A DNA stretch of 64,000 nt from positions 13,360,330-13,424,329 of the forward strand of contig OZ316898.1 of the NCBI GenBank assembly GCA_973895155.1. The letters are read 5' to 3'. Made by a program: the position numbers and the translations under genes. The notes beneath the pieces were generated by a model, which was not told the origin of the DNA, made no database searches, and saw only the letters and a program-made list of their open reading frames with translations. The stretch comes from Marsupella aquatica (Eukaryota > Plantae > Marchantiophyta). Positions 5,704 through 30,809 of this stretch are shown here, in pieces; position 1 is the stretch's first letter; every line of letters starts with the position of its first letter.

Positions 5704-5744
5704 GTATATCAGCCTATTCATTAAAAGTGTATTATTATTTGATT

Positions 5745-6070
5745 TATGTACATTTGGGCAATGAAAAGTGTACTTTTGGGCGAGGAAAAGTGTACATTTG
5801 GCCAATGAAAAGTGTACATTTGGGGATAGAAAAGTGTATAATTGGCCTAAAGAGTGTACATTTGGGCAATAAAAAGTGTATATTTGAACATCAAAATAGG
5901 TACATTTGGCTCTAAAAGTGTACATTTGAGTACATTTGGCCTAGAAAGTGTACATTTGAGTGAAAGAAACATACATTTGGCTTAAAAAGTGTACATTTAA
6001 GTGCAGTTGGTCTAGAAAGTGTAACTTTGAGTGCAACAAAGTGTACATTTGGCCTAAAAAGTGTATATTT
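5745..6070 (+). repeat. Left subterminal repeats AAAGTGTACATTT(GG) of the outer element
   Basis: More than 10 imperfect copies. The core AAAAGTGTA is also the inner part of the TIR. Three further copies lie at about 30698-30754. Confidence 0.85.
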
Positions 6071-6359
6071 TCCTACCAAATCTTATTATAATCATTTAAA
6101 AGAAAGGAATGAATAGAAAAATATTTTTAATTATGCAAAAAAGCAAACATTCATATTCATAATGATCAAAAGTTTAGAAAATGAGGAGATAGTATAACTA
6201 ACACTCAATGACATGGTCTCACATTAAAACTATTAGAATAGTAAATAACTAGTACGTAAGTTAGTATGTTTGAATGAGTGTCGACTATTTACATAAAAAC
6301 TAGGTAAGTAACTATCTAAATTAATTTAATTATTATAGCTTCGCAAGTAACAACTAAGT

Positions 6360-9300
6360 CTACTTGTCCATCCTTTGGAGATAACTTTGGACAGTTTGTA
6401 GAACATTTCGAGGAATCTTCAAACCTCTGCCCGCCATGTTTTCTTCTTTCATGCCAGATTTAAAACCATACATTGCAGAATTTGCATATTGCCAATGTTG
6501 AGCGTTCTCACCAAACCCTGGATCTCGTTCCCATGTCTTAGTGGACATGAAGCAGTTTAGATACCGTGCACTCTCAGTCACATCAAGTTTAGAGTGTTTA
6601 GGCCTCCACCATTCGACTGGAAACATTGGAGCATATTGTTGAGGCATAGGAGGGTTTGTTGGAGATGTAGTTGGGACTTCATGCTTAGGGTCCACCGAAC
6701 CCAAAGCTCTCACCAACCAAAAATGACCTCCACCATTTTTATTCTCCCAATCATCCTCAGGTCGAAGAAATACAAAGTTCCCTTCACGAATATCCTGTAG
6801 GGGAATCCACCGTCCTTGTTCTCTCTCAGCTCGAGATCCAACAAATGGTGCTGCTTGATCTTCCATCTCTTCCAAGACCTCATTTTGAAGAGCCGTCATC
6901 TCTGCATTCTCCTCATCTTCACTTGGAGGACCACTTTGTTCCGGTTGGTTGACCTTGTAACCAGTGCCGTGGTTAGTCTTAGGCCAAAATCCATTTTTCA
7001 AGGGAAATTGAGTACTTCCCTCCCCTTCTAGTGCAAGCCCATTTGTCAACAACTCCACAATTCTCTCCCAATATTTCACAAGAGGAAATCTTTCCTTATA
7101 TGCTATAGATGTCTCATCAGTGCAACTCCTTCTCAAAAAATCAAGGTACTTGTTAAGAAATGGGATAATCTCTTCAGATTTTTTGTGTATCTCTCCAATG
7201 AATTTAGCTAAGGGCTCTCCACTAGGTAAAAGAAGAGAATTTGTTGTCAGATCTATTGCCCAAATGCACCTTCCTCCAACTGGAGCCCAAGCTTGCTTTA
7301 CATGGGACTTATACTGAAATATTGGTACATTATCTCTCATAGAGAAAAGAAATGATACGGGTTTTGAGTGACCTTGAATATCTTTAACTTTGAAAGTTTG
7401 AAGATATTCTTTGTAAGATGCAACTTCTTGTATCAATCTGGGAACTGGATGAATGCTCTCACATTCCCAAACCTCTGCCATAAGAGCAAGGAGAGTTGCA
7501 ACTTCCTTGTGCTGAACTTGATATGATACCTTCGAAAAGAGTGCATCAACATCTTTGTGTGTATGACCAACCATTAGAAAAGACATTTGAACAGTTTCAA
7601 ATACTCCTCTACTCACAAGCTCACTACAAAATGCCATGACAGTCTGGTTTTTGTTATCCTTTGCTGAGTTATCCATTTGTAGTGTTAGGTGCCTTGGCAA
7701 GGGCTTGAAAGATGGACTGCCTTGTTCCCCATGCATGTCCCCTCCTTGATCCTCACCATGTTGGGTGGAGACCGTCTCCGTCTGACTCTCGGCTGCATCT
7801 TCAGAACCAATATACCTATTCATTGGAATACTCTTTGGTTCCAAATATCCCTTAAAAAATGCATCAAAGTCAAGAAGGGCTTGAAAGAAAGGTCTATGAG
7901 GTTCCAAATAAAGGTCATCCAACATGTCACCTGTCTTGTCTCCATTGTACTCTTCAAGGTCTCGAAGACACTTAGCCAAGGATGTCACCGTGAAATCAGC
8001 ATCTCCTGGCCAAAGGCCAGTGACACTAAAGTGTGCATAGACTCCTGGATCCCTTCCGTGGGTCAACATCCCTGTGAGAGCAATAGGTAGTGGCATCCCA
8101 TGACCCGAAAGTGATTTAGGAGTACTGACCATTTTTGGAATCCATGTCTTTGCTTGATCCATCTTGTCGTGAATGATGCAAAGATATTCCCCTGGATGTT
8201 GCTTAGCCATCACTCGATGAGCATAGTAAACATATCTACGTGACATCTGCTCACGAAGATGTTGCGCTCATTTTTCTTCAATTTCAGCACGCTCTTTTTT
8301 CCTTCTTTCTTGCATCAAACTATCTTTGTATTCACAACAAAGAGTACACTTGGCAAATGCACCATCTTTATGGAAACTGAAGTTTGCGAATGATTTGCTC
8401 CAAATCTTGTACAAAGTATTCTCTGTAACTGGAGGAAGCCCCTCTTCCTTCATCTTTGTTCTCACATCTTCCAAAATCTCCAACTTCTTGTAACATGCTG
8501 GAAGACGATACTCAATGGAGTCTGTCCCATGAGCCCCAGCATAAGGTATATGAGGCATGGGCTCTGCGTTTCGAGTCAAAAAATCCTCCAACAGAGCTCG
8601 TGCATGCAAGGTATTTGACCTTGTTTTCATGGAGCCCGTGTTTCCATGGAACCCAATTTTGCAACCCTCCACATATCTCCTTTTGTAATCATAATATTTC
8701 GTGTGGCTAAAGCCATGGATGATTGCAAATGCATGTCGACATACGACCATACCCTTGAGAACATGTTGCCCCTTATCACGAACATCATCTTCTCTATAGT
8801 GGAAGAGGTTGAAAATATGTGATGTTTTTGACTCGCTAGACATCCCGTGAAATTCTATCCGGATATCTTCTATGTCTTCTCTTGGCATAGTCAGACAACA
8901 TTTCTGCTTGCAACAATTCTCTCTTTTAATTTCATCAATCGAAGCTTCCGTTGTTTTTGAAACTGCTTTGGTTTCCAACAACCTTCTCTTCTTTTCAATC
9001 GGATCTACATGGGTCCTCTTGTTGAAATTGTATGGCCTTGTGCGCGGCATTCCCCTATCATTTACATTTGGATAGAGATCATCCCTATCCACCGTCTCCA
9101 TCCTCTCTGAACCTTCAACCAAAATGTCCGACAAAAATTTCCCGTTTGCAAGTAGTTTTGTTGAATCAATCCGCCACCGAACCAAAGTAATTACTCCCCT
9201 ATGGAAATTGGGAAAGTATTGTGATTCCACCACATCTTTCACAGCAATCCCTACATGGTCCTCACCAAGGATTTCATCGTCAACCGTCGCCGTTTCTTGA

Positions 9301-10119: not shown

Positions 10120-10329
10120 CTGCACAATTTGAAATGTAAGGTATTAGTTAACAATGGTCCCAACTAGGAAGCAGATAGGTGTGAACCCCATCCAAGGACA
10201 GTGCGCAAATAGGGATCATCCCCATCAAGCAAAATAATAGGTCCCTAAACAATCCTTATCTAGCCCTAAGATCCCTGATCCCTGATCCCTGATCCTTGAT
10301 CCCTGATCCTTGATCCCTATTTAGACGTT

Positions 10330-12105: not shown

Positions 12106-12196
12106 CACTAGAGTTTCTGCCCTAGCCGCCACGTTAATTGCCCTAGATCTAACGCTCTGTGATCCTCCACGTGTCCATACGACCACGTGTCACAAG

Positions 12197-12326
12197 ATGG
12201 ATCCATCTAGACCTATTCATGTGTCTTTGGTCGTTGAGCCAATAGAGGAGATAGACCTCTCCTCCATTGAGGATGTGGTAGACACGGCCCTCGAGGATTC
12301 CAGAGCCTTCCAATTGCTCAATCCAA
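12197..12326 (+). pseudogene. First coding exon of the outer element's ParB-MTase gene, separated from the rest by the inner element
   Basis: MDPSRPIHV...FQLLNP. After removing 12327-24054 the exon ends CCAA|GTAAGT (phase-1 donor) and joins the phase-1 acceptor TTGCAG|GG at 24734/24735 in frame with ORF 24716. Confidence 0.8.
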
Positions 12327-12571
12327 AACACGATTTCGGACCGACCGAGAAGTGTGTCGGAGTTATCGTTTAGCCCGATCCCGTTTTTTTTCTAAGGCAA
12401 TGCAATGACCGATAAAACTGGCAAAAACTCTCCGAAACGCCACTTTCCTCCATTGCATCGCCGCGGGAATGCAGGGAGCGATACGTGCATCGGGTTTTAC
12501 ATTCCGTCAGTGAAAAAGTCCGAACTGCGAGTAACTTGGTCCAAACCGCGTAATCCAGGAATGACCACGCA

Positions 12572-12668
12572 CTAACCCAGGTAAAAGGGGAACTTAACCA
12601 TGGTTAAGGGGAAATTAACCATGGTTAAGGGGAAATTAACCATGGTTTAGAGCATCTCCTATATAAAG
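12572..12668 (+). promoter_or_regulatory. Three 21-bp tandem units with palindrome TTAACCATGGTTAA, followed by a TATA-like box
   Basis: GGGGAAATTAACCATGGTTAA repeated at about 12587-12648. TATATAAAAG at about 12660-12669. Confidence 0.45.
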
Positions 12669-13780
12669 AGGAGCGGGCTGCCCATAAAACATTTGCTTTC
12701 GCCAGAGCAAATATCTCCTGACTGAGAGCGAATACCAAACTCCCATCAAGTCTTACATTCCTCCCAAGCAATTCGACTCTTTCTACCGAAAACCCGATAA
12801 ATTTATCGGAATAGCTATTCCTGTTCAAGTTCTCCATGTAAGACTAACTAGTCATTTAGTGTAAAATGTCCAGATCCGAGCGGACTGCGATAAATTTATC
12901 GCATTTTGCATTCCTCTGTTGCAATCATTTGATCCAGTGTGTTTAGAGAGGTGTTGCCTTCATTCCGATAAATTTATCGGAGTCTCCATTCCTTTCATGG
13001 AAAGAGGAGTAATTGAGAATCCGATAAATTTATCGGAGTTGTCATTTTTGTGAAAGATTGAATTCAGGGCTTAGGTGTTTGAGGAAGTCATATTTTCAAT
13101 TCGAATGCGGAGTGCGATAAACTTATCGCATCCTCCTGTGAGAATCCTTTTCCTTTGTTTTGTTTGGAGACTCATCTTCATCTCTGATGTCGCAGTGTTG
13201 CCGGGTTTAGGAGGCACAACGGAAGGTCGGTTGCACTCCGTGGACAACAGGTATTGTGACAAATGGCTGTCTTCCTTGAAAATCGTGTCAAACGTGCACG
13301 CCGGTTGTACAAGAGACTCGTGCGACTCAAAGTTCTCCCCATCGGTATAGGAGCATTGTGGATGGGTGGTACTGATCCTGGAGATAGGCAGAATCCTCTC
13401 CGCATTGAATTCTGCGGAATGAATGATGCAGGAGTTCCAATTCGTTCGAGGTTGATGTTAACGGCGTGTTTACATTCTTTGGAGTTTTCTTGTAACTATT
13501 GTTGTCGTCGTCTTGATAACAAGTACCACAAACAGGCTCACTTCTGTTGTAAGATTTGGAACGAAGACCCTTGGGTGAACCTTTCACGATGAGTGTTTCG
13601 ACCTTTTCATTGAGGCGCATCTTGGAAGGACATATTTAAATAAACAAGTCCTACCCTTGCGCAGCGAATATAATACGTCACGAGTCCTAATCGTTAAACT
13701 GTCGTGCAGGGTTGGTACTGTGTTTGGTTACACCTGGTGATTGAAGGTATTTTTATTGGTGGTTTTGGTAGCTCTACTTC

Positions 13781-14329
13781 ATGGCTGCATCGGAGAATCT
13801 AATCGTTGCAAAGATGGGATCCGTTTTAGCCCACGAGCGTAGGAAATATATTCGAGGAAAAGTGCCCGGTGTGGAATGCGGAAGTTTGTTGAATGGACTT
13901 CCCGATGAACTCGTTGAATCTCACATTTGGCCCCTCCTAGCCTTGTCTTGCACACAAGATGAACACCTTGGCCTTGACCTAAAACTTCTACCAGAAGAAC
14001 GACTGACTCGAATGAGAACAATCATTTGTCTTGGAGCCACCTCGAAGAAATGGAACCATCTTGTTGTTGGTACACGATTTTGGGCGCTATTGAAATATGC
14101 AGTCCGTGAGATCAATGACATAAAAAAAATGCTCGCAAGCATTCCTAATGCCGTCCTTCTCTCAAACCTACATATTGCTAGGGTCTACCGAGAGGAAACT
14201 CATTTCCTCCCTCCCATAGATATGCTTGGGTGCTTCTCGTATGACCGATTAGATGCGTTTCTTAGAGTTTGGGTGAATCTTGGAGAAAGCGGGAAGCGGA
14301 CAATTCTTGCATGGCATGGACGAGTCTGA
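13781..14329 (+). CDS. F-box-like protein (cargo of inner element)
   Basis: SLLNGLPDELVESHIWPLL ... LGATSKKWNHLV matches a split F-box consensus (LPDEL..I..L / V.K.W..L). ATG start, 182 aa. Confidence 0.6.
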   Translation: MAASENLIVAKMGSVLAHERRKYIRGKVPGVECGSLLNGLPDELVESHIWPLLALSCTQDEHLGLDLKLLPEERLTRMRTIICLGATSKKWNHLVVGTRFWALLKYAVREINDIKKMLASIPNAVLLSNLHIARVYREETHFLPPIDMLGCFSYDRLDAFLRVWVNLGESGKRTILAWHGRV

Positions 14330-14621
14330 GTGAATGAGGCATTGCAGCGAACATCCGATAAATTTATCGCACTCCTCATTCCTCTAGTCGATTTTGGGTG
14401 CTTGTAAAGAAACACTTTGAATATAATTGACTCTGCCTCCTCTGACTTCGGGTTGTGTGGTCCAAAGTGTATTTTTTTGCGCCTCTTCGGACGATTAGCT
14501 GACAAGTGCATTGGCTTCACAGCCCGTTATACAAGGTACTGTAAAGTTGGATGAAACTTGTAGAATTGTAATTAGTATGTTCTCCAAAATTTATTCCTGA
14601 TTTCTATTCGGTGATCAGGCC

Positions 14622-15335
14622 ATGCTCGAGCGACGCATTTTTGTACCCTTCCTGGATCCTCCAGAATGGGGGAATGGAGCCATGCTGGACCAGCTAAGGA
14701 GGCTGGATGAGTCACTAATTTTAAAGATATGCAGGCTGGTAGTAAAACCGTTTTACCATAACGCATTTCACTTCTATGTAGATCAGGTAGGGGGAGAAAT
14801 TTATATTCGGTGGGATAGATATGTTGGATTTTCTAGAAGAGTTATCCTACTCTTTCTGAAAACCGGTGTAGTAAGACGTTTTATACTCCACTGCTGTCAT
14901 GTTGTGAAGGGCAATCCTGCTTATGAGCCAGAATTCTATGCCGACAACAGACGTAGAGCATTCGATGAGATTCAGGATGTCATTGACGAGCTAGACAATC
15001 CTCTTGCCACTGAGTTTTTTATTGACACTGGTGGGAAACTATATTCATACAAGATTCGTCAACTCCCCCCCCAGCCGGTCTGTGGGCTCTTTAACTTGAT
15101 CTATGTAAGTTGCCTATGGACGAACGTCCTTGCCAATGGTGAGATTTGTCCATGCTGCACAAATGCTTGTTGTGACATTCCGTCACGCCGGTATTCAGTA
15201 GCAGTAGTGAATCCTGAGACTGGTGAAGTTGATTTCCATTGGCTGTGGGCTTATGATCATCGCGTCACTCATATTCCCCAATGGCCCAAGAAGCGGATCG
15301 AACGCTTCGCTCTGGCGAGGTTCAACTATGATTAG
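14622..15335 (+). CDS. Hypothetical 237-aa protein with Cys cluster (CPCCTNACC), cargo of inner element
   Basis: ATG-initiated open ORF with globular-looking composition. No family recognised. Confidence 0.5.
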   Translation: MLERRIFVPFLDPPEWGNGAMLDQLRRLDESLILKICRLVVKPFYHNAFHFYVDQVGGEIYIRWDRYVGFSRRVILLFLKTGVVRRFILHCCHVVKGNPAYEPEFYADNRRRAFDEIQDVIDELDNPLATEFFIDTGGKLYSYKIRQLPPQPVCGLFNLIYVSCLWTNVLANGEICPCCTNACCDIPSRRYSVAVVNPETGEVDFHWLWAYDHRVTHIPQWPKKRIERFALARFNYD

Positions 15336-15555
15336 GGTTTAGGTTTAGGGGTTAAGGTTTTGGATTTAGGGTTCCGTCGCTGATTCTTCGACCTGTAGAC
15401 TCGGCCGTCAATTTAAAGAAGGCTCACTTTTGCGATAATTTTATCAGTCTCTTTGTCCTTGTGTGATGAGATGTCGTGTCCACATGTGCTGTGAGATTGG
15501 CGGCGATAATTTTATCGCTCTTTGCATTGGAATTTGTTTATTTGCAGACTTTTCC

Positions 15556-18500: not shown

Positions 18501-19115
18501 TGGGAGAAGACTAACATTCATGAGCGTCCCGCTGGAGCTCGATTGGCGTGGAGTTTTGAGAACTGGTCGATAGGTTTCTATAGCGAGGAAGGCATTCGGA
18601 ACATGAACATGTACAATTTCCAACCGGATGAGTCTTGCGTCAATATCATCAAGGTTCCATGTGTAACCAAGAAGTCCGTTGATCCGTTGGGATTTGTTGT
18701 GAACCCATATCAGAAGCCTGTTGGTTTAGGGGCTTGGTTTGTTTCCCATTTCTCTGAGAAAGAGGATTGGGTTATTGATCTTTGTTGTGGAACCGGATCA
18801 ACATTAGCTGCTACGCTCCTCAATTCTCGCCAGGGTTGTGGTGTTGATAAGAGTTCTGCGCAGATTGGTTTTGTAAAATCCCGGATCATGATTCTGGAGT
18901 CAAACTGGAATTTATATGAAGAATCCCAGATTGAAGGGCACGGCGTTGAAGGTCATGAGATTCAACCACCAATTGCAGGCCAATTGGGTGTACTCGGGAC
19001 ATCGACTTACGTAGTTGAGGTCGTGAAGGAGATCGAAGAGGAACAAGAAGAAACTGAGGAAGAGCCTCCCAGAACACCAAATGAGGATGATCTCAACGAC
19101 ATGTTATTAGATTAG
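15556..19115 (+). pseudogene. ParB/Srx-like domain + beta-class N6-adenine/N4-cytosine DNA methyltransferase fusion (inner element), one nonsense codon
   Basis: Exons 15556-16524, 16687-17757 and 17988 (or 18015)-19115, all phase-0 GT-AG. ParB-like RPVDRLHVENIK..YRIIGGNHGARA. MTase motif IV LAVADIPYG precedes PYQKP..VIDLCCGTGST (motifs X/I), the beta order. In-frame TAG at 17359-17361. Confidence 0.85.
17779..17960 (+). repeat. Intronic 75-bp tandem repeat (about 2.5 copies), each with CGAGATTTTTATCG
   Basis: Units start at 17779, 17854 and 17929. Confidence 0.9.
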
Positions 19116-19441
19116 TTGCGTGTGCTCGTTAGGATAATGTCAATCACCAATGAAGTTGTCGATAAATTTATCGACTTCTGTATTCCATGAGGAAGAACCT
19201 TTGTCACATTTATTAATGCGATAAATTTATCGGACTTTGCATATATCGGACTGTTGCGGTGTTCTTGCTGGGGGAATGGAGTTGTCGATAATCTTATCGG
19301 ACAGCATTGTATTCTCTAACTGGTTTGTCATTGCAATTATTTAAAAAAAAATATCATTATAGCTTCGAAGTACATAGTCCCAGAACGATAACCACTGTAC
19401 ATATTCATGGGAACGATAACCATTATAACTTAAACCTGAAA

Positions 19442-22400
19442 CTAGCTTCGACTATCAACGACTACAGTCTCCATTGCATTTTGAATGATTCGTCTTGTTT
19501 GTATAGGGAGAGTACTATTTGCCAATAACGCAAAGTTATACGCATAAACGACAGTTTCTGATAGGGACAATTCATCCTCCAGTACTTTGCTAGACGAAGC
19601 CTCTTTCTCCGGATAATATCTGCCTTCAATTGCAGACTCTTCCTCCGAATCCATTGCATACCAAGTGATTTTAATCCGCTCCGGGATGTCGTTAATTCTT
19701 GTGAGAATCTCAGTCACTTTTGCCATCCAGAATGGTCTTCCCTTGGGATCCTGATGGGCTGCTACACATATCATTGCAAATTTAGTATTCACCTCTAGAT
19801 CCTTGAAGTCTCCAATTTCCGTGACTTTTCTTTGACTTCTGGAATACATGACTGTCCTCACACCCGCTACTTTATCAACCAAGCTAGGTTCCATTGCTGC
19901 TTCCGTAGGATTACTCGGAAGTTCTCTCTGTACGTTTACCTTGGGCCAACTCCAATCAAAACTCCATTGTGCAGGTTTCAGGTGGTGCTGAATCACTTCT
20001 TTTTGTTTGTCAAAAAAACGACCCCACCATAGACGATCTGCGTCGTCAAAGTAATTGAATCCATCTTCAATTGCTCTTCGATATTTTTGAAGAGTTGACA
20101 AATAACTTTGAGCCGCCCGCTCATCTTGTTCCTCAGCATCATTCTCTTGCTCTTCATTGTCTCCTGTCGCTCCCGTGGCCGACTTCAATGCCATTTGTGG
20201 TGCGACCCACATTCCAGATGATGGAATGTACCGAACAAAATCCACCATCTCCCCCCAATCGATTGTCGTTGAAAGATGTTTGGCATGGAATACGGACCGA
20301 GCACTTCCATCTTTGAGTACTCTAGTAATCCGAAATTGTTTTTGAGCACTTATGCCGTGGAGAGTACGTAGAACCTGACCATCCATATCCTTGTCATTTG
20401 CTTGATCCTTGTCTGACACAAATTTCTTGAAATCGGCAACCTCGTCGATGAAAAATATCTTTGCCGTAGGATTGTAGGATTCCTCTATGATTGCTGAAAG
20501 AGTGTCCAACCGGAAAGCTTTCCGCTTGTTCAATTTTGAAGAAAACTTGCTAAACATTTTATCAATTTGATCATGGGTGTGCCCCACCAATAGGAAACCA
20601 ACCTTTATTTTCTGGAAAACACCTATCTCCACCAACATATTCAAATATGCCATAAGATATTTATTCTTGTTTTCCCGAGCTGTGTTATCAAGCTGGAGGT
20701 AAAGCACTGGAGGGAGCAGACCTTCCCAGGTATTCAGAATATGCTGGATAACGTGGATGGTTAGGTTGCTATCATTGTGAATATTTGGATAGTTCAAAAA
20801 AACATTTGAACTTAATTGTTTGTTGAAGATCAAACAACCCACTACGTGTACGGGGATGAAATACTTTTCATCCATATTCTTCGGACACCGAATGAAATGA
20901 GGTAACTCTGTCTTCTTTTGATCCATTCCATCAATACAGATGCCCAAATATTTCTCCGGACTCTTGTAACATTTGCTCCGGTGCTTTGCTAACTTCTCCC
21001 TCTCGACTGCTTGTGCCTTCCGATGCTCGTTTAGCAATGTTGAGAATTTTCCTACGACAATAAAAATTTTTAGGACAAAACATGATAACCGCAATGTTGA
21101 ACCCTGACAGCGATAAATTTATCGGGTTCAGTATTCAAACACGAGACCGTAATGATAAACCCTGACAACGATAAATTTATCGGGTTCAGTATTCAAACAC
21201 AAGACCGTAATGAAAAACTATGACAACGATAAATTTATCAGGTTCAGTATTCAAACTGTTCAAACGATATATTCACTCACATGGCCAAAGAAGAAGCACA
21301 TGAATACTCAACCCGATAAAATTATCGGGAGTAACACACAGGTTTAGAAATTTACTCTTTTCTGCTTCGAGTGTTGCCTTGTCACGGAGTGCTTTGAATT
21401 CAGTACACGGGGCGCAGGTGGAGAAACGGCTCCTTTTGGGGATGCGCACGCGAGGAAACTCCTTGTTCCAAATGCGAACAAACCACGAATATGTCATGCC
21501 TTGTTCTTGGCGCATTAGAGTTTCGGACTGGAAGGCATCAAAAACTTCTGTTTTTGTCCAATTGTCAGGTAAATGAAAGATATCCTTGTTGGGGAGACTC
21601 TCGACATTTGTGGAAAAAAAATCATCCAGCCATTGGACGAGACCAAGATGTGTGGGTGATTTTTCTCGACAAACTGTACCAATCTGTATCCGAGAAAACA
21701 TGTTCTCCGAGATTTTTTGGAGACGATTATTTCCTAGTGAAAATAATTTCTTAAAACCACTTCGACAAAAGGATCTACCGCTAACTGAGTAACCACTTGC
21801 ACCAGCATGCCCACCCTTCACACATCCTCTTAGAAGGACGTTCTTCTCTGGGTAGGATAGCCCATAGTAATAAGTGCATTGTTTCGTCACGGCTAGCAGA
21901 CCCAAATTGCGCAGACAGTAATTATCACAACACGAATACTTATGAATTTCTCTCATTTTGTTTCTATTCAATTTGTCATTTATCACATTGTCTTTCCTAG
22001 TAATTCGGTCCCTATCTTTTTTACTAGGCTCATTTGACTTCTCTACAACCTGAAATCCGTTCATAACATTGGCATTTTCGGGTCCTTCAGGTGCCTCGCG
22101 AATAGATGCATCACTCCCTACTGAGCTACCATCCTCTATAGATCTCCTTGACACATTTAGAGGGGCACTGAATAGACGACTATAGCTATTCTCTTTGACA
22201 GCTCCTTCTAAACATTCAGACACAACTTGTGCTATTATATCGGATTCTCTATCTCCTTCCTCATCTTCGTCCTCCGATGCACTCGACTCATCTGAAAACA
22301 CAATTGGACTCCGTGGCTCTCTATACATAACCCGAACGCCACTAAGACCTCTCCTCGATACTTGGAGTCTGGAACCAATGACAGTCCGCCCTTGAGAACT

Positions 22401-23003
22401 TGGAGATTCTGGATTCGCACGTGCAGTCCCAACGACTCCGCGAGCTGCTGGAAAATTGAGCACTTGTTCACCACGATTCCCATGGACCATTCGAGAAAGG
22501 GCCGAGTCTGGACTTCGTAGTCTGATTCCCTCGCTTGCTTGCACATCCAGTCCAGGCAATGCAAAGACCGATCGCCGTATCGGTCTTTGTATTTCTGTGT
22601 CCCGATCCTCACCCGGAGACTGAAAGATCCGTCGTTGAACTTGTGTTGAATGTGGCGACTTGAATGCCGACTGCGATACGCGTATCGGTCGCCGGATACC
22701 CTCTCCATAACCCGGGATGGATGGCCTGAAGCGACATCTCGGACCTAAACCTGGGATTGAAAGTTTCTCATTTCTTGGCGATGGAACACTCAAGAGACGA
22801 CGCTTCTCAGGTTTACTAGGCGACACATAGTAAGCACTGGGCTCAGGACCAGAACTTGCATCAGAATCTGAGTCAGAGATTTCGGGCACTATTTGCTGTG
22901 AGAGAGGTAGAGCTTTAAGTATGCGACTTGGCAAACAGCGAGCGACAAGATTAGGAGAGGATTCAACTGAACTGGAAGGTGAATCTGTGTCTGATTGAGA
23001 CAT
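19442..23003 (-). CDS. DUF7869-type (Sola-like) DDD transposase of the inner element, apparently intact
   Basis: Exons about 23003-21356 and 21051-19442 join in frame through a phase-1 GT-AG intron (EAEK-R-KFSTLL). Motifs FSTCAPC, ICIDGMDQKKT, LQLDNTARENKN, FLLVGHTHDQIDKMFS. Start codon uncertain. Confidence 0.88.
21095..21256. repeat. Intronic 58-bp tandem repeat x3, each with CGATAAATTTATC
   Basis: Motif starts at 21111, 21169 and 21227. Confidence 0.9.
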
Positions 23004-24089
23004 GGCTATCCAAGACACTATGGGGCTTTGCATTCCTCCCACAATCAGGGAAAACGAAAGGCTCAACGGACAAAATGTTGCTCCAAGAACACAACTCCCA
23101 AAACTCTACTCTCGATAATGACGCCAAAAACTTATCGGCGGTGGCCCTTTTATAGTGTCTGTTGAGGGGTTGGCCCACGTGTCCACTTTTGATTGGCTGT
23201 CACCCTAAACGACAAAATAGCAGAAAAGGGTATATTTCTTGGATTTCCAATTTCATTCTCACACGTGCATCGTGGCAAAATTATATAGTTTTGAAATTGA
23301 AGCGATAAATTTATCTGATGTTGGTATTGCAAAAGTGGTTCCTTCATATGGAAGTTGCAATTTTGAAATTGAAGCGATAAATTTATCTGATGTTGGTATT
23401 GCGAAGAGTTTTCTTCATATGGATAGGAATTTGAATTTAACCGATGAACCGAAGGATCTTAGTATTGTCGACTAGTATTTTTGTCGCCCGTAGTTTTCGC
23501 GATAATTTTATCGGACTGCGCATTGCTGTTGAAAGAATGGCATGTTGACTATGGTCATTTGCGGAGGTAACTGGTCAATTGCGGAGGTAACTGCAAGGTA
23601 AATTTGACGAGCCGTGCAGTAATTCTTATCGATTGTGATGTAAAATTTTTGTGGTAAATATCCAAAAACTGAGAAACCTGAGATTGGGTCGGAGTTTTCG
23701 TGGCTCAAATCCGGAGTCCGATACAGTTATCGCACTTGGCTTGAAACATGGATATGGATTTCTAGATAAGACCTTTCATATATCTTCGGAGAGCGTGAAT
23801 ATGAGGTCGAGGAGAAAGTTTTTCGGATCTAATTGTTCCTTGATAATATGAATGTTTGTTAGCATGAATTTCATTGGTTTTGATCATTATTAAATTTGTT
23901 GTTTCAATCCGAACTCTGATACGAATTACATTATTTCCCCAAAAACGCGTTTTTGATGAAAAAAACTGCCGATTTCGCGAGATTCGGCAGAAAATAAAAA
24001 TACACTTCTCATTTAGAGGAAATAGTTCTCGTTCGGTCCAAAATCGTGTTCCAAGTAAGTATCTCGGTAACAAGTTGAATATTTGTGCA

Positions 24090-24660
24090 GTGGACAGAGA
24101 TCATCCCTGTCCAAGTAGAGTCCAAGTAGAAGATAGTGATCTTTATTAGGAATTGGATAGAGATGATCTCTGTCCAAACTGAGGACAGAGATCATCCCTG
24201 TCCAATTGGATAGGGATCATCTATTTCCAAAATGACGATAGAGGATGTCCAACCAGAGGATCGAAACTGTTCTATCAGAGGATGCTGAGGATCTTTATTT
24301 GGAATTGGATAGAGATGATCCCTATCCAAGTAGAGGATAGAGATGATCCCTGTCCAATTCCTAATAAAGATCGTCAGTATCCTCTGATCGAACAAAGATG
24401 ATCTTTATTAGGAATTGGACAGAGATCATCTCTATCCAAGTAGAGGATAGAGATCATCCCTATCCAAGTAGAGGATAGAGATCATCCCTATCCAAGTAGA
24501 GGATAGGGATGATCCCTGTCCAATTCCTAATAAAGATTGTCAAAATCCTTTGATCAAACAAAGATATCTTTGTTACAAATTGGACAGAGATCATCCCTAT
24601 CCAAGTAGAGGATAGAGATCATCCCTGTCCAATTGGATAGGGATCATCTCTGTCCAAACT
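24090..24660. repeat. Second array of the outer-element palindrome, filling intron 1 of the outer ParB-MTase gene
   Basis: More than 10 copies of GGAYAGRGATSATCYCTRTCC, beginning right after the inner element's right TIR. Confidence 0.9.
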
Positions 24661-24734
24661 GTGAGAGAACCTCATCTTTGTCGATTACAAATTATGATTT
24701 TCCAAACTAATATGCATGGATGGGACTATTGCAG

Positions 24735-27700
24735 GGAGCGATCTAAATGGATTGAAACCAACAATTTCAGAATCAGATTGCTTCGAGGGAGTCTTGTTGG
24801 AGCAGAGAAAACCAGATTTTCGTTGGGGCCTTGAGTTCTCTAGAGTTGATTTTGATTTCCTTAGCACGTCAGAGAGACGGGATCCCATTTTGTGCATAAA
24901 GGTCAGAACAGAAGATCAAGAGACTCTTGTACTCGGACCTGTAGTCTTCATTGGAATTGAAGGAAGAGGGTTTGTTTCCATCATTCTTGAACTCCATGAA
25001 AGGATACGATGGGTTAAGCTACATCTACCATCAAAGGCGTATTCTTCAGAGTTCAATGTTGAGTGGTCTGCTGCTGGAGAACTTGGCGTGATGGCAATGG
25101 GCTTTTTCCCTAAGTCGTATTCAACTCAAAAGGTGATTGCTGGAGTGAAGGGGATTCTTCCACTTGACATCATGTATGGGTTCCAATATGTGAAGCTGAA
25201 TATCCATAAACACCAAGGGAATTATACATTTTTGGTGACATGGATTTTAAATAATTTGCTTGACAAGGCAGGATTCCTATCTTCGGAATCAGGTGTTTGC
25301 CTTGACAAGCAAATTGCATTTGCAGAGGAGTTTGCGATGGACAATGCAAAAAAGTGGGTAGAATCATTACCCAAGCCTACAAATGTTGCACCAGTAGTGG
25401 TGAACGAGCTTCCAGTAGTTGTTAACAAAGAAGTTCCCAAAGAAGTTCCCAAACCTAGAAAAATATCTCAAGAGACAACAACAGGGACTGCAGGAACAAC
25501 GGCTGGGACAAGCACCAAACAAGTGGTAGGGAAGCGAAGACTAAGAGAGAGGAAGGGTCGCGAGAAAATTGAGACATTGCCGAAGGAACCCGAGAAGAAG
25601 CCAGTAGCGAAGAAACATAAAACTGACAAGTCTCTTTTGCGGTCAACCCCTGCGGACGTACAGATGCTCCCAGAAGATGAGGGAGACAAACTTGATGCCC
25701 TTGAGGAGAAGAAGGTCTTAGAAGGAAATGATGTTCTCCAGAGAATAGAGCAGTACTATACTTTTGGGATAAATGAACTGTTTTCTATTCCAGTGGAGAA
25801 AATTGTGCCTGCACCTGCAAGATTATGTTACAGGATGCTCAGTAGTACCCATGTGAAGCACATAGCCGAATCCATGGTCAAAAACCCCGGACATGAACCT
25901 CACGTCGCGGACCTGCTTCCTTATAGTTTGAAGCTTAGAAAGTTGCTCCATTTTGACAGCACGAAGAATGACCGCAAAGACTTTCTTGCAGGAGTGAAGA
26001 AAGGCGAGATTGGTTTCTTTGCCATCAGTGGGCAACATTCGGCTAGGGCGGCCAAGTGGGTTCTCGAATGGGCCAAAACTGATGCCAAGCTCACAGTGTT
26101 GGCAAAAAAGTTAAAATACAGGAAGTCTAGATTATTGTCAGACCATACACCATCGGCTATATTGGTTGAGCACTCAATGAGATCAAATGCCATCAATTCG
26201 ACGATGGTGTTTCAATCCTGCTTCAAAGATACAATTGTTCATGCAAGGAAACAATTCCTTGAATGCGGAGGACCAAGAAAGCCAAAGCACGGGGACAACA
26301 AGTCAAATGCCCAAGAGAATCAAAAATTTCAGGTGAGAAACACTTTTCTTGTTTGGACAGAGATGGTCTCTGTCCAAGAGTGTGACCGTCCGTTACATTG
26401 ATTTTAGTTCAATATATTTCTGGTTATGATTTGGATGGAGATGGTCTCTATCCAAGAGTGTGATCGTCCATTCTAGAGATTTCTCTTCCTTCTACTTTTG
26501 GTTATGACTTGGATGGAGATGATCTCTGTCCAAGAGTGTCATCGTCCATTCCAAAGATTTCTCTTCCTTCTACTTTTGGTTATGACTTGGATGGAGATGA
26601 TCTCTGTCCAAGAGTGTCATCGTCCATTCAAGAGATTTCTCTTCCTTTTACTTTTAGTTATGACTTGGATGGAGATGGTCTCTGTCCAACAAGCAAGTGA
26701 TAGTTTGTTGTCAAATCTCATTGATTGTAGATAACTTATTTTCCCCTAATTTTGACTGTAGGATTATTTGGCATTGGCAAGGATGACCATGTGGAGAAAA
26801 GACTTGAAAAATGTATATTGGTTGCTCTTTGCCGAGAATGATCTTTTCGAGCTCTGGCGATTAGTGTGCCAGATGTGGATTGATGGACATCTTCCTGATG
26901 GAGCTGGTACACAGGGAAACAAAAGGTCCAAAAAGGGTATAACGGTCGCAATGTTCGTTGTTTTGATGGTGAAATATCAAGTAGAGATTTGACCAGAATT
27001 TTGAACAAGGTGAAGTCAAGTCAAGTTTTATTGAAGAAGGATCCGACAAATAAGTTAGATGTTCCAGCAATGGAGGACTTTGCAAAGGAGGTGAAGATAT
27101 TGATCAAATTGAAGTCTCTTATTGGAGATTACTACTTCAAGAAGGATCCGAAAAACTTCCCAGCAGATAGTGATTGGGTTAAAGTAATTGAGGTCCTCCC
27201 ATTGTTAGGTGCCGAGTCGGAGTTGAACAGGTGCTGAAGAGCGGCTGGTGAAGTATGGTTGACAAATTTATTGAAGTCTAATCATACAAAGGAGAGTGAG
27301 ATATTGCCAATGACATTGGTGATGCGTCTAGATGATATTTACTGTCAGAAGTTTGGCGGGGGGACAAGTTCTCGGACCCAACTGTGGGTCACATTTTTTA
27401 GTAACAACCTAATGAAGACAGTCGATCCGGAGTCGTTGGAAGAACAATCTCCAACATGCCCTCTTGCAATTGTTGATTTCAGCCGACTTCAACAGAAGGA
27501 GTGGACCGAAGCAGAGATTTTGGTACTCTTCCAATACATAGTAGAGCTACCACGGAATCCCACCATTGTTGTGATGATAACTGTCCATCCGGGTTACCTT
27601 GTACTGAATGTCCTAAGCGCTCTTCGTAAATTAGGACATTCAAAAACTCTGACTATTCACATTGAGTATGGGAGTTATTACCGAGATGATCAACCTCACC

Positions 27701-28719
27701 CTCACGACTCATGTTGGAAGGGAGGAATAGAAGAAGTTATCTTTGCGGAAATTTCTCGCGAAGAGAACGTCAGCTGGGATGAAGTGTTCAAGCCCAACCA
27801 GATGAAGCCAAAATGGGTGTACGGTGAAAAGGATACTGATTTCGTGGTTGAGAAGGTCAAGGGAAAGGGAAAGGCAAAGGGCACGGACGAGGAGTCATTA
27901 CATGAAGATCTAAGAAATATGATGACCCCAGAAGAGGCAGCAATACTTCTGCACATGGCACCTCGATTTGAGACGGTCGGCGCTCGGGGTGGGTGGGTGA
28001 ATCCTCACGCCAAACCCACACGGATGATCCAAAAGATCATCCAAACACTGTCCGAGCCGGGGGATTTGATTCTTGACTTTTTCTCTGGCGGTCAAGTGAT
28101 GAAGGCATCCTTTTTTTCTCAACGTGAATGTTTTGTTTATTGTGACTCTCAACATGAGAGACATTTTGTGGAAGCATATGCTTCGTTCCTTTGTGAGAAG
28201 GTTCCCACCATCAAAGATCGTTATGATCGCTATGTCGGTGGAAGTTCTAGACATTGGGAACCCTCTTCTGCTGCTGTTGCTATTGACGATGAATCAGATG
28301 GTGATCAAGAAGATGGAGCTGACCAATCAGTCAAAGACGATGGGCCATTGGAGGAGGCATACGTGAAGAATTTGGATGACCGAGTTGGCGAGGGTGAAAA
28401 TATTGACCTTGTGGAAGACGATATGATTGTTGGATCTGCACCTTGCAGTTCACCAATTACAGATGTTGCCCCCATGGGACCCAATGAGGGCCAGTATGAT
28501 GATAACTTGGATAGAGATGGTCTCCATCCACAATTGCCTGGACAAGAGATGGAAGCTGATACATTTGAAAAACTGTCTTCAAACAACCTTCTCAATCAAG
28601 GTGCGGAGAGGCATGGTGAGTCCAATGAACTCGACACATTGGGATTGAGACCACAACCCATCCAAATAGCTGACATTCCTGTGAATGAAGCAAGTGCATC
28701 CACGACTGCTGACAACTAG
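24735..28719 (+). pseudogene. ParB-like + beta-class methyltransferase-fold fusion (outer element), disrupted
   Basis: Exon 24735-26332 has YRMLSSTHVKHIAESM..FFAISGQHSARA. Exon from 26762 has a frameshift at about 26954 and a TGA at 27235-27237. NPHAKPTRMIQKIIQTLSEPGDLILDFFSGG matches motifs X/I. The motif IV position reads LAIVDFSRL. Confidence 0.8.
26350..26690 (+). repeat. Intronic 78-bp tandem repeat containing the outer palindrome variant GGATGGAGATGATCTCTGTCC
   Basis: Units recur at about 26423, 26501, 26579 and 26657 within intron 26333-26761. Confidence 0.88.
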
Positions 28720-29288
28720 GCAGGTGCTTCAATTTGTCCCGATACACTCTTTTCCACTTCTGATGACAAATTGGTGTTTGTTCAATCACAATCAAGAAGT
28801 CCCGTTATCCTTCCACTCTCAAAAAAGAAAGGGAAGAGAGTAGGATCAACTGGATATAAGTCACTTGAATATGATTGTCGATGTTAAGTGTGGAAAAGTG
28901 GACCCGATGTAGGAACTGAAGTTGCGTTGGATGCTGCTCAATCAATTTTGAACAATGACTCGTACAAAAAGCACAAGAAAGATCCAACTTATAGAAGTGG
29001 AGAATTGGGATTGATAACTCCGGTTTGGTCTGCACCTTATTGGATAGAGGAGAGTACCTCCGATGTCAATTATGAGATCCAACAAGAGCTCAGTGATGAT
29101 ATCTTGATTGATGAATATGGATCGCATTGTTAGCCAAGGTCTAGATTGAGCGATGTGACCTTATCAATTTGATATAATATAGTCTGTATAATTATACTTC
29201 AAGTTTAACAATTAGAGCATCAGTATCAATATCCATCTCCTCTTTACGGTTTCTCAATGAATACGATCAGTATGCAGATATATTTTCT

Positions 29289-30422
29289 TTGTGGTTGGCC
29301 ACTTGTGTTCGGTTGACAGAGATGATCTCTATCCAAACTTCAAATGTGGTTTTTTCTCTAAGATTGGTATTTGTTGCACTTGCAGAACCAAGACTTTGTT
29401 CCATCAAGCGCAAATTGCTGATTTTGGATCTTAACAAAATACTTTGGGATTCAGTTGAATTCCAAAGCAAGGGCAAATCCAGAAATGTTGTGACCCCAAC
29501 TGGAGTGCATTGGGATAGAAAAAATGGAATTAGTCGCATGTACACAAAAAGGCCAGGGCTCCATGAGTTTCTAAAGTTGGTTTTTGACCGATTTGACGTT
29601 GCAATTTGGACATGTGCTGGGGTACATCGAACAGTGAAAATGCTGAACATGATGTTCACTGCTGAGGAGCGGTTGAAACTTAAGTTTGTATTCACACATG
29701 TGGAAGCCTTTGACACAGGCATTCAAAGGCGTGACATTACAAACGGAAAGGCAAATGTGCTACTGAAGGATTTTCGGGTGGTATGGAGTGGATTTGGAAA
29801 TCTATATGATGAAACCAACACCCTCCTTGTGGATGACTCCCCCCTTAAGGCATTTGCCAACCCAAGCATGACCGGACTATTTCCAGTGCCCTACACGCAT
29901 GCCAATGGTGGAGATAATTTTCTTCTAACAATTCTTTGGCCTTGTCTTGAGAAACTATCCCATGCAAGTGACATTAGATGTTATCTTCTTCTTAACTCTC
30001 CACTGTGGTCTCTATTGCACATAAAGAGAGACAAGGTAAAAAATGAAATTACTTATGATCAACTTAGTAAGAGATGTGCAACAAAAATTTGGAAGTCACA
30101 GTTTATGCATAGTGTGTTGGACCTCAATAGCAATGAGATTCCTTGGAACGTGAAGCATCGTATATGTAGTTTACGTCCTGAGGCTGAACTTGATGATGCA
30201 CTTGTCACGTCACTTGCTAAAGCATTTGTAGGAAGGGACTATTCAGGTCCACATAGAGAAAATCCCAGACACTTTTTGCGGGAGATTATAGCCATTAGGA
30301 ACAACACCACCAAGTTTCAGCTCCCTAAAGATAAAGGGACTTGCAACCGTGACACTAGGGTAGATAGTAAAGGAGACAGGGGCACGTGCTCAAATACACA
30401 TTGTAAGGAGCACTTTGTTTAG
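29289..30422 (+). CDS. FCP1/SCP (NIF) HAD-family phosphatase-like protein, cargo of outer element
   Basis: KLLILDLNKIL, KRPGLHEFLK..FDVAIWT, LLKDFRVVW, NTLLVDDSPLKAFANP. Probable acceptor TTGCAG at about 29384, so the true start is unresolved. Confidence 0.82.
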   Translation: MWLATCVRLTEMISIQTSNVVFSLRLVFVALAEPRLCSIKRKLLILDLNKILWDSVEFQSKGKSRNVVTPTGVHWDRKNGISRMYTKRPGLHEFLKLVFDRFDVAIWTCAGVHRTVKMLNMMFTAEERLKLKFVFTHVEAFDTGIQRRDITNGKANVLLKDFRVVWSGFGNLYDETNTLLVDDSPLKAFANPSMTGLFPVPYTHANGGDNFLLTILWPCLEKLSHASDIRCYLLLNSPLWSLLHIKRDKVKNEITYDQLSKRCATKIWKSQFMHSVLDLNSNEIPWNVKHRICSLRPEAELDDALVTSLAKAFVGRDYSGPHRENPRHFLREIIAIRNNTTKFQLPKDKGTCNRDTRVDSKGDRGTCSNTHCKEHFV

Positions 30423-30809
30423 AGATCTAACTCATGTTAAGCCCCTTAGATAGAAGAAAGACATTGTAAATTTGGAGATAATTGTATATTATTTTATAAT
30501 CTATTTGGAGTTATGTCATTTTGTTCACACATATTCAAGGGTTTCTTTGTGCTGAAATGTTTTTATAAGTATGATCTCTATCCTACTATTCTTTGTGAAT
30601 TAATAAATAATGATCTCTATCCTATTATTCTTTGTGAATCAATATATGATATAATATGTATTATTTATTAATATAATACTAATATGATTTGGCCTATAAA
30701 GTGTACATTTAGGGACCAAAAAGTGTACATTTGGGGACATGAAAGTGTACATTTCAAGACTGATTTGTGAACAAAAGAAAATACACTTTTAATGAATAGG
30801 CTGATGTAT

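What the first reader, a model, noticed from the sequence alone, without database searches (positions are those of the whole stretch)
5708..30805. Family of about 12-13 kb Sola-like transposons pairing a transposase with a ParB-DNA-methyltransferase fusion and element-specific palindromes: candidate self-marking/anti-silencing system
Seen in sequence: two diverged elements, each with its own TIRs and 4-bp TSD. Each encodes a DUF7869-type transposase and a spliced ParB-like + beta-class amino-MTase gene, and each carries dozens of copies of a different GAT..ATC palindrome that stops at its TIRs. Established knowledge: ParB proteins load on palindromic parS sites; ParB-MTase fusions are typical of phages/prophages; beta-class enzymes write 6mA or 4mC; Arabidopsis VANDAL elements use VANC proteins and non-coding repeat motifs for sequence-specific anti-silencing. 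Inference: the ParB-MTase recognises its own element's palindrome and deposits 6mA/4mC (or simply binds) to mark self, counter 5mC silencing or regulate transposition. The same two-gene core in two otherwise dissimilar elements argues for a conserved module, not incidental capture. I cannot verify that it is undescribed.
Basis: partly seen in the sequence, partly recalled or inferred. Interest (0 to 1): 0.93.

Follow-up and report, generated by a model that had tools for sequence, protein, structure and literature searches.

The report
Nested transposons carrying ParB-methylase accessory genes
Two dead, nested copies of a giant plant jumping-gene family each carry, beside the transposase, a gene for a bacterial-style ParB DNA-binding domain fused to a DNA-methylase fold, and each is studded with its own palindrome, so the element probably recognises its own DNA; a similar gene pairing was already reported in algae.

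Summary
The outer element is 5708-30805 (25-bp perfect TIR, TSD GTAT). The inner element is 12327-24050 (TIR 27/32, TSD CCAA) and sits inside the outer one. Each has a DUF7869 transposase, a ParB/Srx-fold region and a beta-class amino-methyltransferase region. Each has a private palindrome, 19 and 47 copies, with none elsewhere in the 64 kb and about 0 expected by chance.

The module is conserved. ParB plus methylase are fused in relatives from Chara, a fern, Ginkgo and liverworts. The gene lies next to DUF7869 genes in 4 of the 5 outside loci with enough flank, and every element has its own repeated motif.

- Both copies here are broken.
- The outer lineage has a conserved but degenerate methylase (no PY, no GxGT), so methylation cannot be the common function. 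DNA binding is the likelier shared role. Only the inner lineage keeps D-x-P-Y.
- The idea is not undescribed. Ectocarpus Sola1-1_Ec32 (2025) carries a ParB-methylase gene with the same self-modification hypothesis, and red-algal Plavaka elements have ParB genes beside inverted-repeat arrays.

This scan has already noted the same module many times on other DNA of this genome. Binding and anti-silencing remain untested inference.

The parts
5708..30805 (.). Outer element (about 13.4 kb without the insert): TIRs at 5708-5732 and 30781-30805; TSD GTAT at 5704-5707 and 30806-30809
5740..6075 (+). Left subterminal direct repeats (about 14 copies of an AAAGTGTACATTTGG-like unit). Three more lie at 30699-30760. 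They are distinct from the palindromes and are the likely transposase-binding sites.
   Evidence: the same type of repeat is at both ends of the Calypogeia relative L005
6360..10102 (-). Outer transposase ORFs (6360-8246 with DUF7869, 8268-9716, 9692-10102)
   Evidence: 67% and 51% aa identity to L005
10173..11270 (.). Outer palindrome array A: 28-bp tandem units holding the 21-bp palindrome GGAYAGRGAT-S-ATCYCTRTCC. It lies between the divergent transposase and accessory genes.
12197..12326 (+). Putative exon 1 of the outer accessory gene (starts with ATG). It is cut off from its GTAAGT donor (24055) by the inner element.
   Evidence: the exon assignment is inferred
12327..24050 (.). Inner element (11,724 bp): TIRs at 12327-12358 and 24019-24050; TSD CCAA at 12323-12326 and 24051-24054
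12795..23732 (.). Span of the 19 copies of the inner palindrome CGATAAATTTATCG, in clusters at 12795-13128, 14356, 15433-15517, 19160-19299, 21111-21327 and 23303-23732. All lie between ORF pieces.
13772..16647 (+). Inner upstream ORF pieces of unknown function on the accessory-gene strand. 13772-14326 resembles L006:178-552 and 15439-16647 resembles L007:253-735.
16687..17760 (+). Inner ParB/Srx plus HTH coding region, with an in-frame TAG at 17359-17361. The 3' exon end is approximate.
   Evidence: other copies read C at 17359
17988..19112 (+). Inner methyltransferase ORF with D-I-P-Y-G-F, N-P-Y-Q-K-P and C-C-G-T-G-S-T motifs. The exon probably starts a little inside the ORF.
19442..23066 (-). 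Inner transposase (ORFs 19442-21094 with DUF7869 and 21273-23066). The gap between them holds palindromes.
24092..24655 (.). Outer palindrome array B, in the first intron of the accessory gene
24698..26398 (+). Outer accessory ORF. Its C-terminal third (about 25760-26200) folds as a ParB/Srx domain.
26355..26687 (.). 78-bp tandem repeats carrying degenerate copies of the outer palindrome
26762..27237 (+). Outer linker region, conserved in relatives. It is broken by a frameshift near 26960 and by TGA at 27235-27237, where relatives have Arg.
27238..28716 (+). Outer methyltransferase-like ORF with degenerate motifs (V-D-F-S-R; F-F-S-G-G-Q)
28888..29130 (+). Conserved C-terminal piece of the outer accessory protein (ends in an I-D-E-Y-G-S motif shared with relatives)
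29289..30422 (+). NIF / CTD-phosphatase-like ORF. The DxDxT motif reads D-L-N-K-I.
   Evidence: 52% identical to L005:13717-14607

Best explanation
These are two dead copies, one inserted into the other, of two deeply diverged lineages of one family of giant cut-and-paste transposons (DUF7869 transposase, 4-bp TSD). The elements carry a conserved accessory gene. Its product joins a ParB/Srx N-domain and a helix-turn-helix to a beta-class amino-methyltransferase fold.

Each lineage also carries arrays of its own palindrome in non-coding DNA around that gene: the promoter region, introns and 3' flank. The most likely working is that the accessory protein binds these palindromes, much as ParB binds parS. 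It would thereby mark or organise the element's own DNA.

In the inner lineage it may also write N6-methyladenine, because D-x-P-Y, NPYQKP and GxGT are kept. In the outer lineage the methylase fold is a conserved pseudo-enzyme. The effect there must be independent of methylation: regulation of the element's genes, protection from silencing, or help in assembling the transposition complex.

Shown: the anatomy, the folds, the conservation of the module, and the element-specific motifs. Inferred: binding, methylation, and the downstream effect.
For: - Anatomy.
- Folds: the ParB-type model of the close relative P0001 (83% identical) has only ParB/Noc/KorB as top Foldseek matches, E from 7e-5. The outer model gives ParB/Noc at E 4.6e-3. 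With VIA-align its 8 best chains (Z 5.1-7.5) are all of the ParB/Srx superfamily, followed by a drop to Z 3.
- Methylase family: 252 representatives at E up to 0.001. The motifs are conserved in the inner clade and canonical D-P-P-Y-G appears in more distant members.
- Fusion: the ParB profile hits the N-terminal part of most long methylase homologues, including Chara, Ginkgo and Adiantum proteins.
- Linkage: DUF7869 genes lie beside the gene in L002, L004, L005 and L008.
- L005, from Calypogeia fissa, is a complete syntenic relative of the outer element, with a similar TIR and TSD ATAA.
- Every element has its own repeated motif in non-coding DNA, and cores are shared within clades. The inner element and L004 share CGATA...TATCG, and L007 is close to it. 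The outer element and L005 share GAT-S-ATC. L002 and L008 share CGAAAATATTTTAC.
- The outer type has separate subterminal repeats, so the palindromes are a second class of site.
- The inner family is multi-copy, and the other copies read C at 17359 where this copy's TAG stop begins.
Against: - No binding or methylation data exist.
- Pfam ParB models do not reach significance (only a faint HTH_ParB hit, E 0.043). Inner and outer ParB regions align only weakly by profile (hhalign E 0.013, probability 3%).
- Model confidence is moderate (pLDDT 64-65).
- The ParB arginine patch GERRxRA reads GGNHGARA or SGQHSAxA, so CTP-dependent ParB behaviour is doubtful.
- Some motifs (L004, L006, L007) are only quasi-palindromic.
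- The Chara locus L001 has two ParB-methylase units but no DUF7869 in the 49.5-kb locus.
- The palindromes could equally be sites for the transposase.
Confidence: 0.55

Rival explanations
1. Operator model. The ParB-like protein is a KorB-type transcriptional regulator. The palindrome arrays in the shared promoter and in introns are operators through which it represses or activates the transposase and its own gene, giving copy-number control. No chromatin marking is involved.
For: In the outer element, L005, L002 and L008, arrays lie between the divergent transposase and accessory genes. KorB is the best VIA match of the outer model.
Against: Many copies lie in introns and 3' flanks far from any promoter. 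The conserved methylase fold has no role in this model.
Confidence: 0.2
2. The palindromes are internal binding sites or enhancers for the DUF7869 transposase. The ParB-methylase has an unrelated role, for example modifying excised DNA or acting on host targets.
For: DNA transposons often carry repeated transposase sites. In the inner element some copies are subterminal (12795-13128 and 23303-23732). Motif cores follow transposase relatedness as well.
Against: The outer type has a different, classical set of subterminal repeats at both ends. Its palindromes are concentrated in the accessory-gene half and the middle of the element, not at the ends.
Confidence: 0.15
3. The arrays are ordinary minisatellites or hairpin-forming repeats that expanded by slippage, perhaps feeding small-RNA silencing. 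No dedicated protein binds them.
For: Much of the outer set is a 28-bp tandem array, and L005 has 35-bp units.
Against: The inner copies are dispersed with unrelated flanks while the 14-mer itself is kept. All seven elements examined have a repeated motif in corresponding non-coding places.
Confidence: 0.08

Closest known systems
Sola1-1_Ec32 of Ectocarpus (Genome Biol 2025, PMC12477816)
   Same: [quoted passage not shown] The authors propose that it binds and modifies its own transposon.
   Different: The host there is a brown alga and no palindrome arrays are reported. Here the hosts are liverworts and other streptophytes, each element has its own palindrome, and one lineage has a conserved degenerate methylase plus a CTD-phosphatase-like ORF. 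I did not test sequence homology to the Ectocarpus protein or transposase.
Plavaka PAG3 of the red alga Bostrychia (preprint 10.1101/2025.02.11.637652)
   Same: A transposon accessory protein with an N-terminal ParB-like domain. Tandem arrays of inverted repeats lie beside the gene and are proposed to be its binding sites.
   Different: The effector domain there is a 2OG oxygenase rather than a methylase fold, and the transposon superfamily differs (Plavaka/EnSpm).
Bacterial and plasmid ParB/KorB/Noc with parS-type palindromes
   Same: The N-domain fold followed by a helix-turn-helix, and short palindromic sites repeated on the replicon that encodes the protein.
   Different: The arginine patch is not canonical. 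There is no ParA partner. A methylase fold is fused. The setting is a eukaryotic nuclear gene with spliceosomal introns.
Phage and prophage ParB-methylase fusions, and chlorophyte ParB-HTH-Dam proteins (Iyer et al., PMC4738411)
   Same: A ParB-type domain fused N-terminally to an adenine or N4-cytosine methylase, of prokaryotic origin.
   Different: The proteins described there are Dam-type in algae and chytrids and are not tied to palindrome arrays. Here the methylase is PF01555 (beta class) and transposon-borne in streptophytes.
VANDAL/VANC anti-silencing of Arabidopsis
   Same: The general idea only: a transposon-encoded factor acting on the element's own non-coding repeat motifs.
   Different: No sequence or fold relation was seen or tested. 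VANC causes loss of 5mC. Nothing here shows any effect on silencing.

Membership tests
Sola1 superfamily of DNA transposons | 4-bp target site duplication | tested here: met
   GTAT (outer), CCAA (inner), ATAA (L005)
Sola1 superfamily of DNA transposons | AWWT-type target preference, called a hallmark of Sola1 in PMC3845634 | tested here: not met
   None of the three TSDs fits AWWT. With n=3 this is weak.
Sola1 superfamily of DNA transposons | Transposase homologous to Sola1 DDE transposases | not tested
   Only the Pfam label DUF7869 was obtained. No Sola1 reference sequence was at hand. The link rests on the shared accessory gene in Ectocarpus Sola1-1.
ParB/Srx superfamily | ParB N-domain fold | tested here: met
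   Inner type: Foldseek best matches are ParB/Noc/KorB, E from 7e-5. Outer: Foldseek E 4.6e-3 and VIA Z 5.1-7.5 for 8 ParB/Srx chains, then a drop to Z 3. Model pLDDT is 64-65.
ParB/Srx superfamily | GERRxRA arginine patch (CTP binding) | tested here: inconclusive
   The inner clade has an invariant G-G-N-H-G-A-R-A-K. In the outer clade (I-S-G-Q-H-S-A-x-A-A) the Arg is not conserved.
ParB/Srx superfamily | Helix-turn-helix after the N-domain | tested here: inconclusive
   Inner type: the profile aligns to the Spo0J HTH at E 0.12, Pfam HTH_ParB matches 3 of 17 aligned sequences at E 0.04, and the Foldseek alignments span 280-305 columns. Not tested for the outer type.
ParB/Srx superfamily | Binding of a cognate palindrome | not testable with these tools
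   Needs EMSA or DAP-seq.
Beta-class N6A/N4C DNA methyltransferase (PF01555) | Profile match above the curated cut-off | tested here: inconclusive
   Inner 26.9 bits against 26.7. Outer 25.6 bits, below the cut-off. Relatives reach 40-66 bits over the whole profile.
Beta-class N6A/N4C DNA methyltransferase (PF01555) | Motif IV (D/S)-P-P-(Y/F) placed before motif I | tested here: inconclusive
   Inner clade: D-[ILF]-P-Y-G, with the first Pro replaced but D, P and Y kept; distant members have D-P-P-Y-G. Outer clade: a conserved D-F-x-R, so not met there.
Beta-class N6A/N4C DNA methyltransferase (PF01555) | Motif I FxGxG(T) for AdoMet binding | tested here: inconclusive
   Inner: L-C-C-G-T-G-S-T, met. 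Outer clade: F-F-S-G-G-Q, lacking GxGT.
Transposon ParB-methylase accessory gene (as in Ectocarpus Sola1-1_Ec32) | ParB-like and methylase domains in one gene, on the strand opposite to the transposase, inside the TIRs | tested here: met
   Outer divergent, inner convergent. Single intronless ORFs carry both domains in L002 and L004.
FCP1/SCP (NIF) CTD phosphatases | DxDxT catalytic motif | tested here: not met
   Pfam NIF E 2.9e-16, but the motif reads D-L-N-K-I.

The most novel reading that the evidence does not exclude
Across streptophytes, and perhaps wider, giant DNA transposons encode a self-recognition system: a ParB-derived protein and a co-evolving, lineage-specific parS-like palindrome array. 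In several lineages the methylase fold has become a non-catalytic DNA reader. The system would then act without methylation. It might shield the element from silencing. It might instead compact or synapse a 12-20 kb element for transposition. That would be a eukaryotic, transposon-borne counterpart of bacterial ParB-parS.
Probability: 0.35. Interest if true: 0.8.

Novelty: new variant of a known kind. Interest (0 to 1): 0.55.

Why it matters
If the accessory protein really reads its own element's palindromes, this would be a transposon-encoded self/non-self label in plants, built from a bacterial partition protein. It could be tested directly with DAP-seq and long-read modification calls. The window holds a likely active-type methylase lineage beside a conserved pseudo-methylase lineage. 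That separates two hypotheses that the published algal notes leave merged, binding and methylating. It also extends the module to land plants, charophytes, ferns and a gymnosperm.

Tried and rejected
- Pfam ParB models on all exon pieces: no significant hit; scanning the aligned relatives gave only a faint HTH_ParB hit, E 0.043, in 3 of 17.
- phmmer of the ParB and methylase exons against PDB sequences: nothing. The profile of the outer ParB region against PDB: only noise.
- The inner-type ParB HMM against outer-type proteins: no hit at E up to 10. hhalign: only E 0.013. The common origin of the two ParB regions therefore rests on fold, on motif position and on the shared gene architecture.
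- RNA evidence: the four runs that hold the stretch cover introns as well, so they look like DNA. No spliced joint was seen, and neither expression nor exon junctions could be confirmed.
- Adiantum loci: no DNA was served.
- Chara locus L001: no DUF7869 found.
- L004: I could not read a clean TSD.
- Incidental capture of a host or phage gene: rejected, because the architecture and the linkage recur in relatives with only 16-40% identity in the aligned regions.
- The spliced full-length proteins were not assembled.

Full report
**Anatomy**

The stretch 5708-30805 is one transposon with another inside it. The outer element has a perfect 25-bp terminal inverted repeat at 5708-5732 and 30781-30805 and is flanked by GTAT on both sides. 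The inner element runs from 12327 to 24050. Its 32-nt termini match at 27 positions and it is flanked by CCAA on both sides. The sizes are 11,724 bp for the inner and about 13.4 kb for the outer without its insert.

The inner element landed exactly between a short ATG-initiated ORF of the outer element (12197-12326) and a GTAAGT at 24055. It therefore probably split exon 1 of the outer accessory gene from its splice donor. That exon assignment is inferred.

**Genes**

- Transposases. Each element has a DUF7869 ORF: outer 6360-8246(-), E 1.5e-43; inner 19442-21094(-), E 4.4e-49. Each has further ORFs upstream on the same strand.
- Methylase ORFs. On the other strand each element has an ORF matching the C-terminal part of PF01555 (N6_N4_Mtase): inner 17988-19112, 26.9 bits against a cut-off of 26.7; outer 27238-28716, 25.6 bits.
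- Methylase family. An exhaustive HMMER search with the inner ORF found 252 cluster representatives at E up to 0.001. The longer ones match PF01555 over nearly its whole length, at up to 66 bits. Named members come from Chara braunii, Ginkgo biloba and the fern Adiantum. Relatives of the outer ORF come from the leafy liverwort Calypogeia fissa.

**The ParB part**

- Pfam's ParB models gave no significant hit on any exon piece. Scanning the aligned relatives gave only a faint HTH_ParB hit, E 0.043, in 3 of 17 sequences.
- The inner exon 16687-17358 has homologues at 52-83% identity that run on through the piece 17362-17994.
- An AlphaFold model of the closest one (83% identical, pLDDT 64) has only ParB, Noc and KorB chains as top Foldseek matches. 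E starts at 7e-5 and the alignments span 280-305 columns, covering the N-domain plus the helix-turn-helix.
- The family profile also aligns weakly with the HTH of Spo0J (E 0.12).
- For the outer element, the C-terminal third of ORF 24698-26398 was modelled with five relatives (pLDDT 65). Foldseek puts ParB/Noc first (E 4.6e-3). An independent all-against-representatives alignment gives eight ParB/Srx-superfamily chains at Z 5.1-7.5, followed by a drop to Z 3.
- Inner and outer ParB regions are barely alignable by profile (hhalign E 0.013; no HMM hit). The alignment that does appear falls on the same ParB box.
- The canonical arginine patch is not kept: G-G-N-H-G-A-R-A in the inner clade, and S-G-Q-H-S-A-x-A in the outer. 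The fold is ParB-like, but CTP-clamp behaviour is uncertain.

**Is the fusion real and conserved?**

Yes. The ParB profile hits the N-terminal part of most long methylase homologues, including the Chara, Ginkgo and Adiantum proteins. In two metagenomic contigs both domains lie in single intronless ORFs of 981 and 789 residues.

They were searched one by one by reference.

**Is it linked to the transposase?**

- Of the loci with enough flank, L002, L004, L005 and L008 have DUF7869 genes next to the accessory gene, on the opposite strand.
- L005, from Calypogeia fissa, is a complete relative of the outer element. Its TIR matches at 19 of 22 positions, its TSD is ATAA, it has the same subterminal repeats, and the order is the same: transposase, ParB, methylase-like, CTD-phosphatase-like.
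- Transposase and accessory gene sort the elements into the same two clades: outer with L005 and L006; inner with L004, L007, L002 and L008. This fits joint inheritance and does not fit repeated capture.
- The accessory protein diverges faster than the transposase: 38-40% against 51-67% for outer versus L005, and 36% against 54% for L002 versus L008.
- One exception is the Chara locus L001. It holds two ParB-methylase units but no DUF7869 in the 49.5-kb locus.

**Catalytic status**

- The inner clade keeps D-[I/L/F]-P-Y-G, N-P-Y-Q-K-P and G-[ST]-G-[ST]-[TG]. More distant members, among them L002 and the L008 cluster, have canonical D-P-P-Y-G. The Asp form of motif IV is the form usually found in N6-adenine enzymes; that statement rests on established knowledge, not on a test here.
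- The outer clade conserves V-D-F-[S/G/T]-R in place of motif IV and F-F-S-G-G-Q in place of motif I, across eight homologues that are only 29-40% identical to the outer copy. That is a conserved pseudo-enzyme, not random decay.
- Methylation therefore cannot be what all these elements have in common.

**State of the copies**

Both copies are broken.
- The inner gene has TAG at 17359-17361 where relatives have Gln. Contigs of four public runs from two studies all read C at 17359, so this stop is not shared by the other copies.
- Those runs lay 376-1429 contigs at 90-100% identity over every part of the 6-kb stretch, introns included. The family is multi-copy and the runs look like DNA, so they gave no evidence on expression or splicing.
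- The outer gene has TGA at 27235-27237 where relatives have Arg, a frameshift near 26960, and the inner element inserted in it.

**The palindromes**

- CGATAAATTTATCG has 19 matches at up to two mismatches. All lie between 12795 and 23732, against 0.10 expected.
- GGAYAGRGAT-S-ATCYCTRTCC has 47 matches at up to two mismatches. All lie inside the outer element and none in the inner, against 0.00 expected (positions also).
- The inner copies are dispersed with unrelated flanks in every non-coding gap: 5' region, between ORF pieces, between the convergent 3' ends, in the gap within the transposase gene, and upstream of the transposase.
- The outer copies form a 28-bp tandem array between the divergent genes (10173-11270), a second cluster in the first intron (24092-24655), and degenerate copies in 78-bp repeats (26355-26687).
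- The outer element also has a separate, classical set of subterminal direct repeats at both ends, as does L005. The palindromes are therefore a second class of repeated site.

**Motifs in relatives**

Every related element examined has its own repeated motif in corresponding non-coding places.
- L002 has 15-17 copies of a motif with the core AAAATATTTT.
- L008 has six copies of nearly the same motif.
- L005 has about 30 copies of a 27-bp palindrome in 35-bp units.
- L006, L004 and L007 have shorter sets, some only quasi-palindromic.

Cores are shared within clades. The inner element and L004 share CGATA...TATCG, and L007 is close to it. The outer element and L005 share the centre GAT-S-ATC. 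L002 and L008 share their whole core. This is what a co-evolving protein-site pair would look like. It does not say which protein binds.

**Interpretation**

Self-recognition by the ParB-type protein is the best reading, at about 0.55. The reasons are the fold, the palindromic and repeated nature of the sites, their position around the accessory gene and the shared promoter rather than at the termini, and the existence of separate subterminal repeats. Methylation is plausible only for the inner lineage. Anti-silencing is one of several possible outcomes. Autoregulation in the manner of KorB, or compaction or synapsis of a very long element, fit equally well.

**What is known**

- The Ectocarpus transposon survey (PMC12477816) describes the 21.5-kb Sola1-1_Ec32 family. 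Its opposite-strand gene encodes a ParB-like domain and an N4C/N6A methyltransferase domain. [quoted passage not shown]
- The Bostrychia genome paper (preprint 10.1101/2025.02.11.637652) reports ParB-domain accessory genes in Plavaka elements with tandem arrays of inverted repeats beside them, and makes the same suggestion.
- Iyer et al. (PMC4738411) list ParB-HTH-methylase fusions in chlorophytes and chytrids.
- I found no paper on land plants, and none mentions DUF7869.
- New here: the streptophyte range, the conserved pseudo-methylase lineage with a CTD-phosphatase-like ORF whose DxDxT motif is also altered, and motif cores that follow clades.
- The Sola1 label is only partly tested. The 4-bp TSD fits, but the AWWT preference cited as a hallmark (PMC3845634) is not seen in the three TSDs.

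**Earlier notes of this scan**

Other windows of the same genome have been reported with the same module, including in Mutator-like elements, and with a third palindrome in the element just before this window. I did not test those. If they hold, they would strengthen the link between the palindromes and the accessory gene rather than the transposase.

Noticed in passing
window 29289-30422 (+); L005:13702-14607: A CTD-phosphatase-like (NIF) ORF is conserved at 52% between the outer element and its Calypogeia relative. The catalytic DxDxT reads D-L-N-K-I, which suggests a second pseudo-enzyme in the same element. It is unclear whether this is a separate gene or the last exons of the accessory gene.
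   Followed up: partly
window 12585-12680: Three tandem copies of a second palindrome (TTAACCATGGTTAA) lie just upstream of a TATA-like CTATATAAAG, near the left end of the inner element. This may be the promoter of the inner accessory gene.
   Followed up: no
window 13772-16647 (+): ORF pieces upstream of the inner ParB exon are conserved in relatives: 13772-14326 resembles L006:178-552 and 15439-16647 resembles L007:253-735. They have no Pfam match, so their function is unknown. They may be N-terminal exons or a third gene.
   Followed up: partly
window 17754-17978: Three 75-bp tandem repeats fill the presumed intron between the inner ParB and methylase exons.
   Followed up: no
window 535-4167 (-): A 1210-codon ORF lies in a G+C-rich stretch (53-55%) left of the outer element. 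It was not examined.
   Followed up: no
window 11920-12060: A G+C-rich CTCCGCTCCT-type low-complexity tract lies just upstream of the putative outer exon 1.
   Followed up: no
L001 (Chara braunii) 10262-12025 and 36145-38211: One annotated 1825-residue Chara protein merges two ParB-methylase units that lie 26 kb apart. No DUF7869 was detected in the 49.5-kb locus.
   Followed up: partly
window 62 positions 4/18 and 7/15 of the outer 21-mer: Variation among the outer palindrome copies is almost entirely by transitions (Y at positions 4 and 15, R at positions 7 and 18). The two arms often do not change together, so many copies are imperfect palindromes.
   Followed up: no
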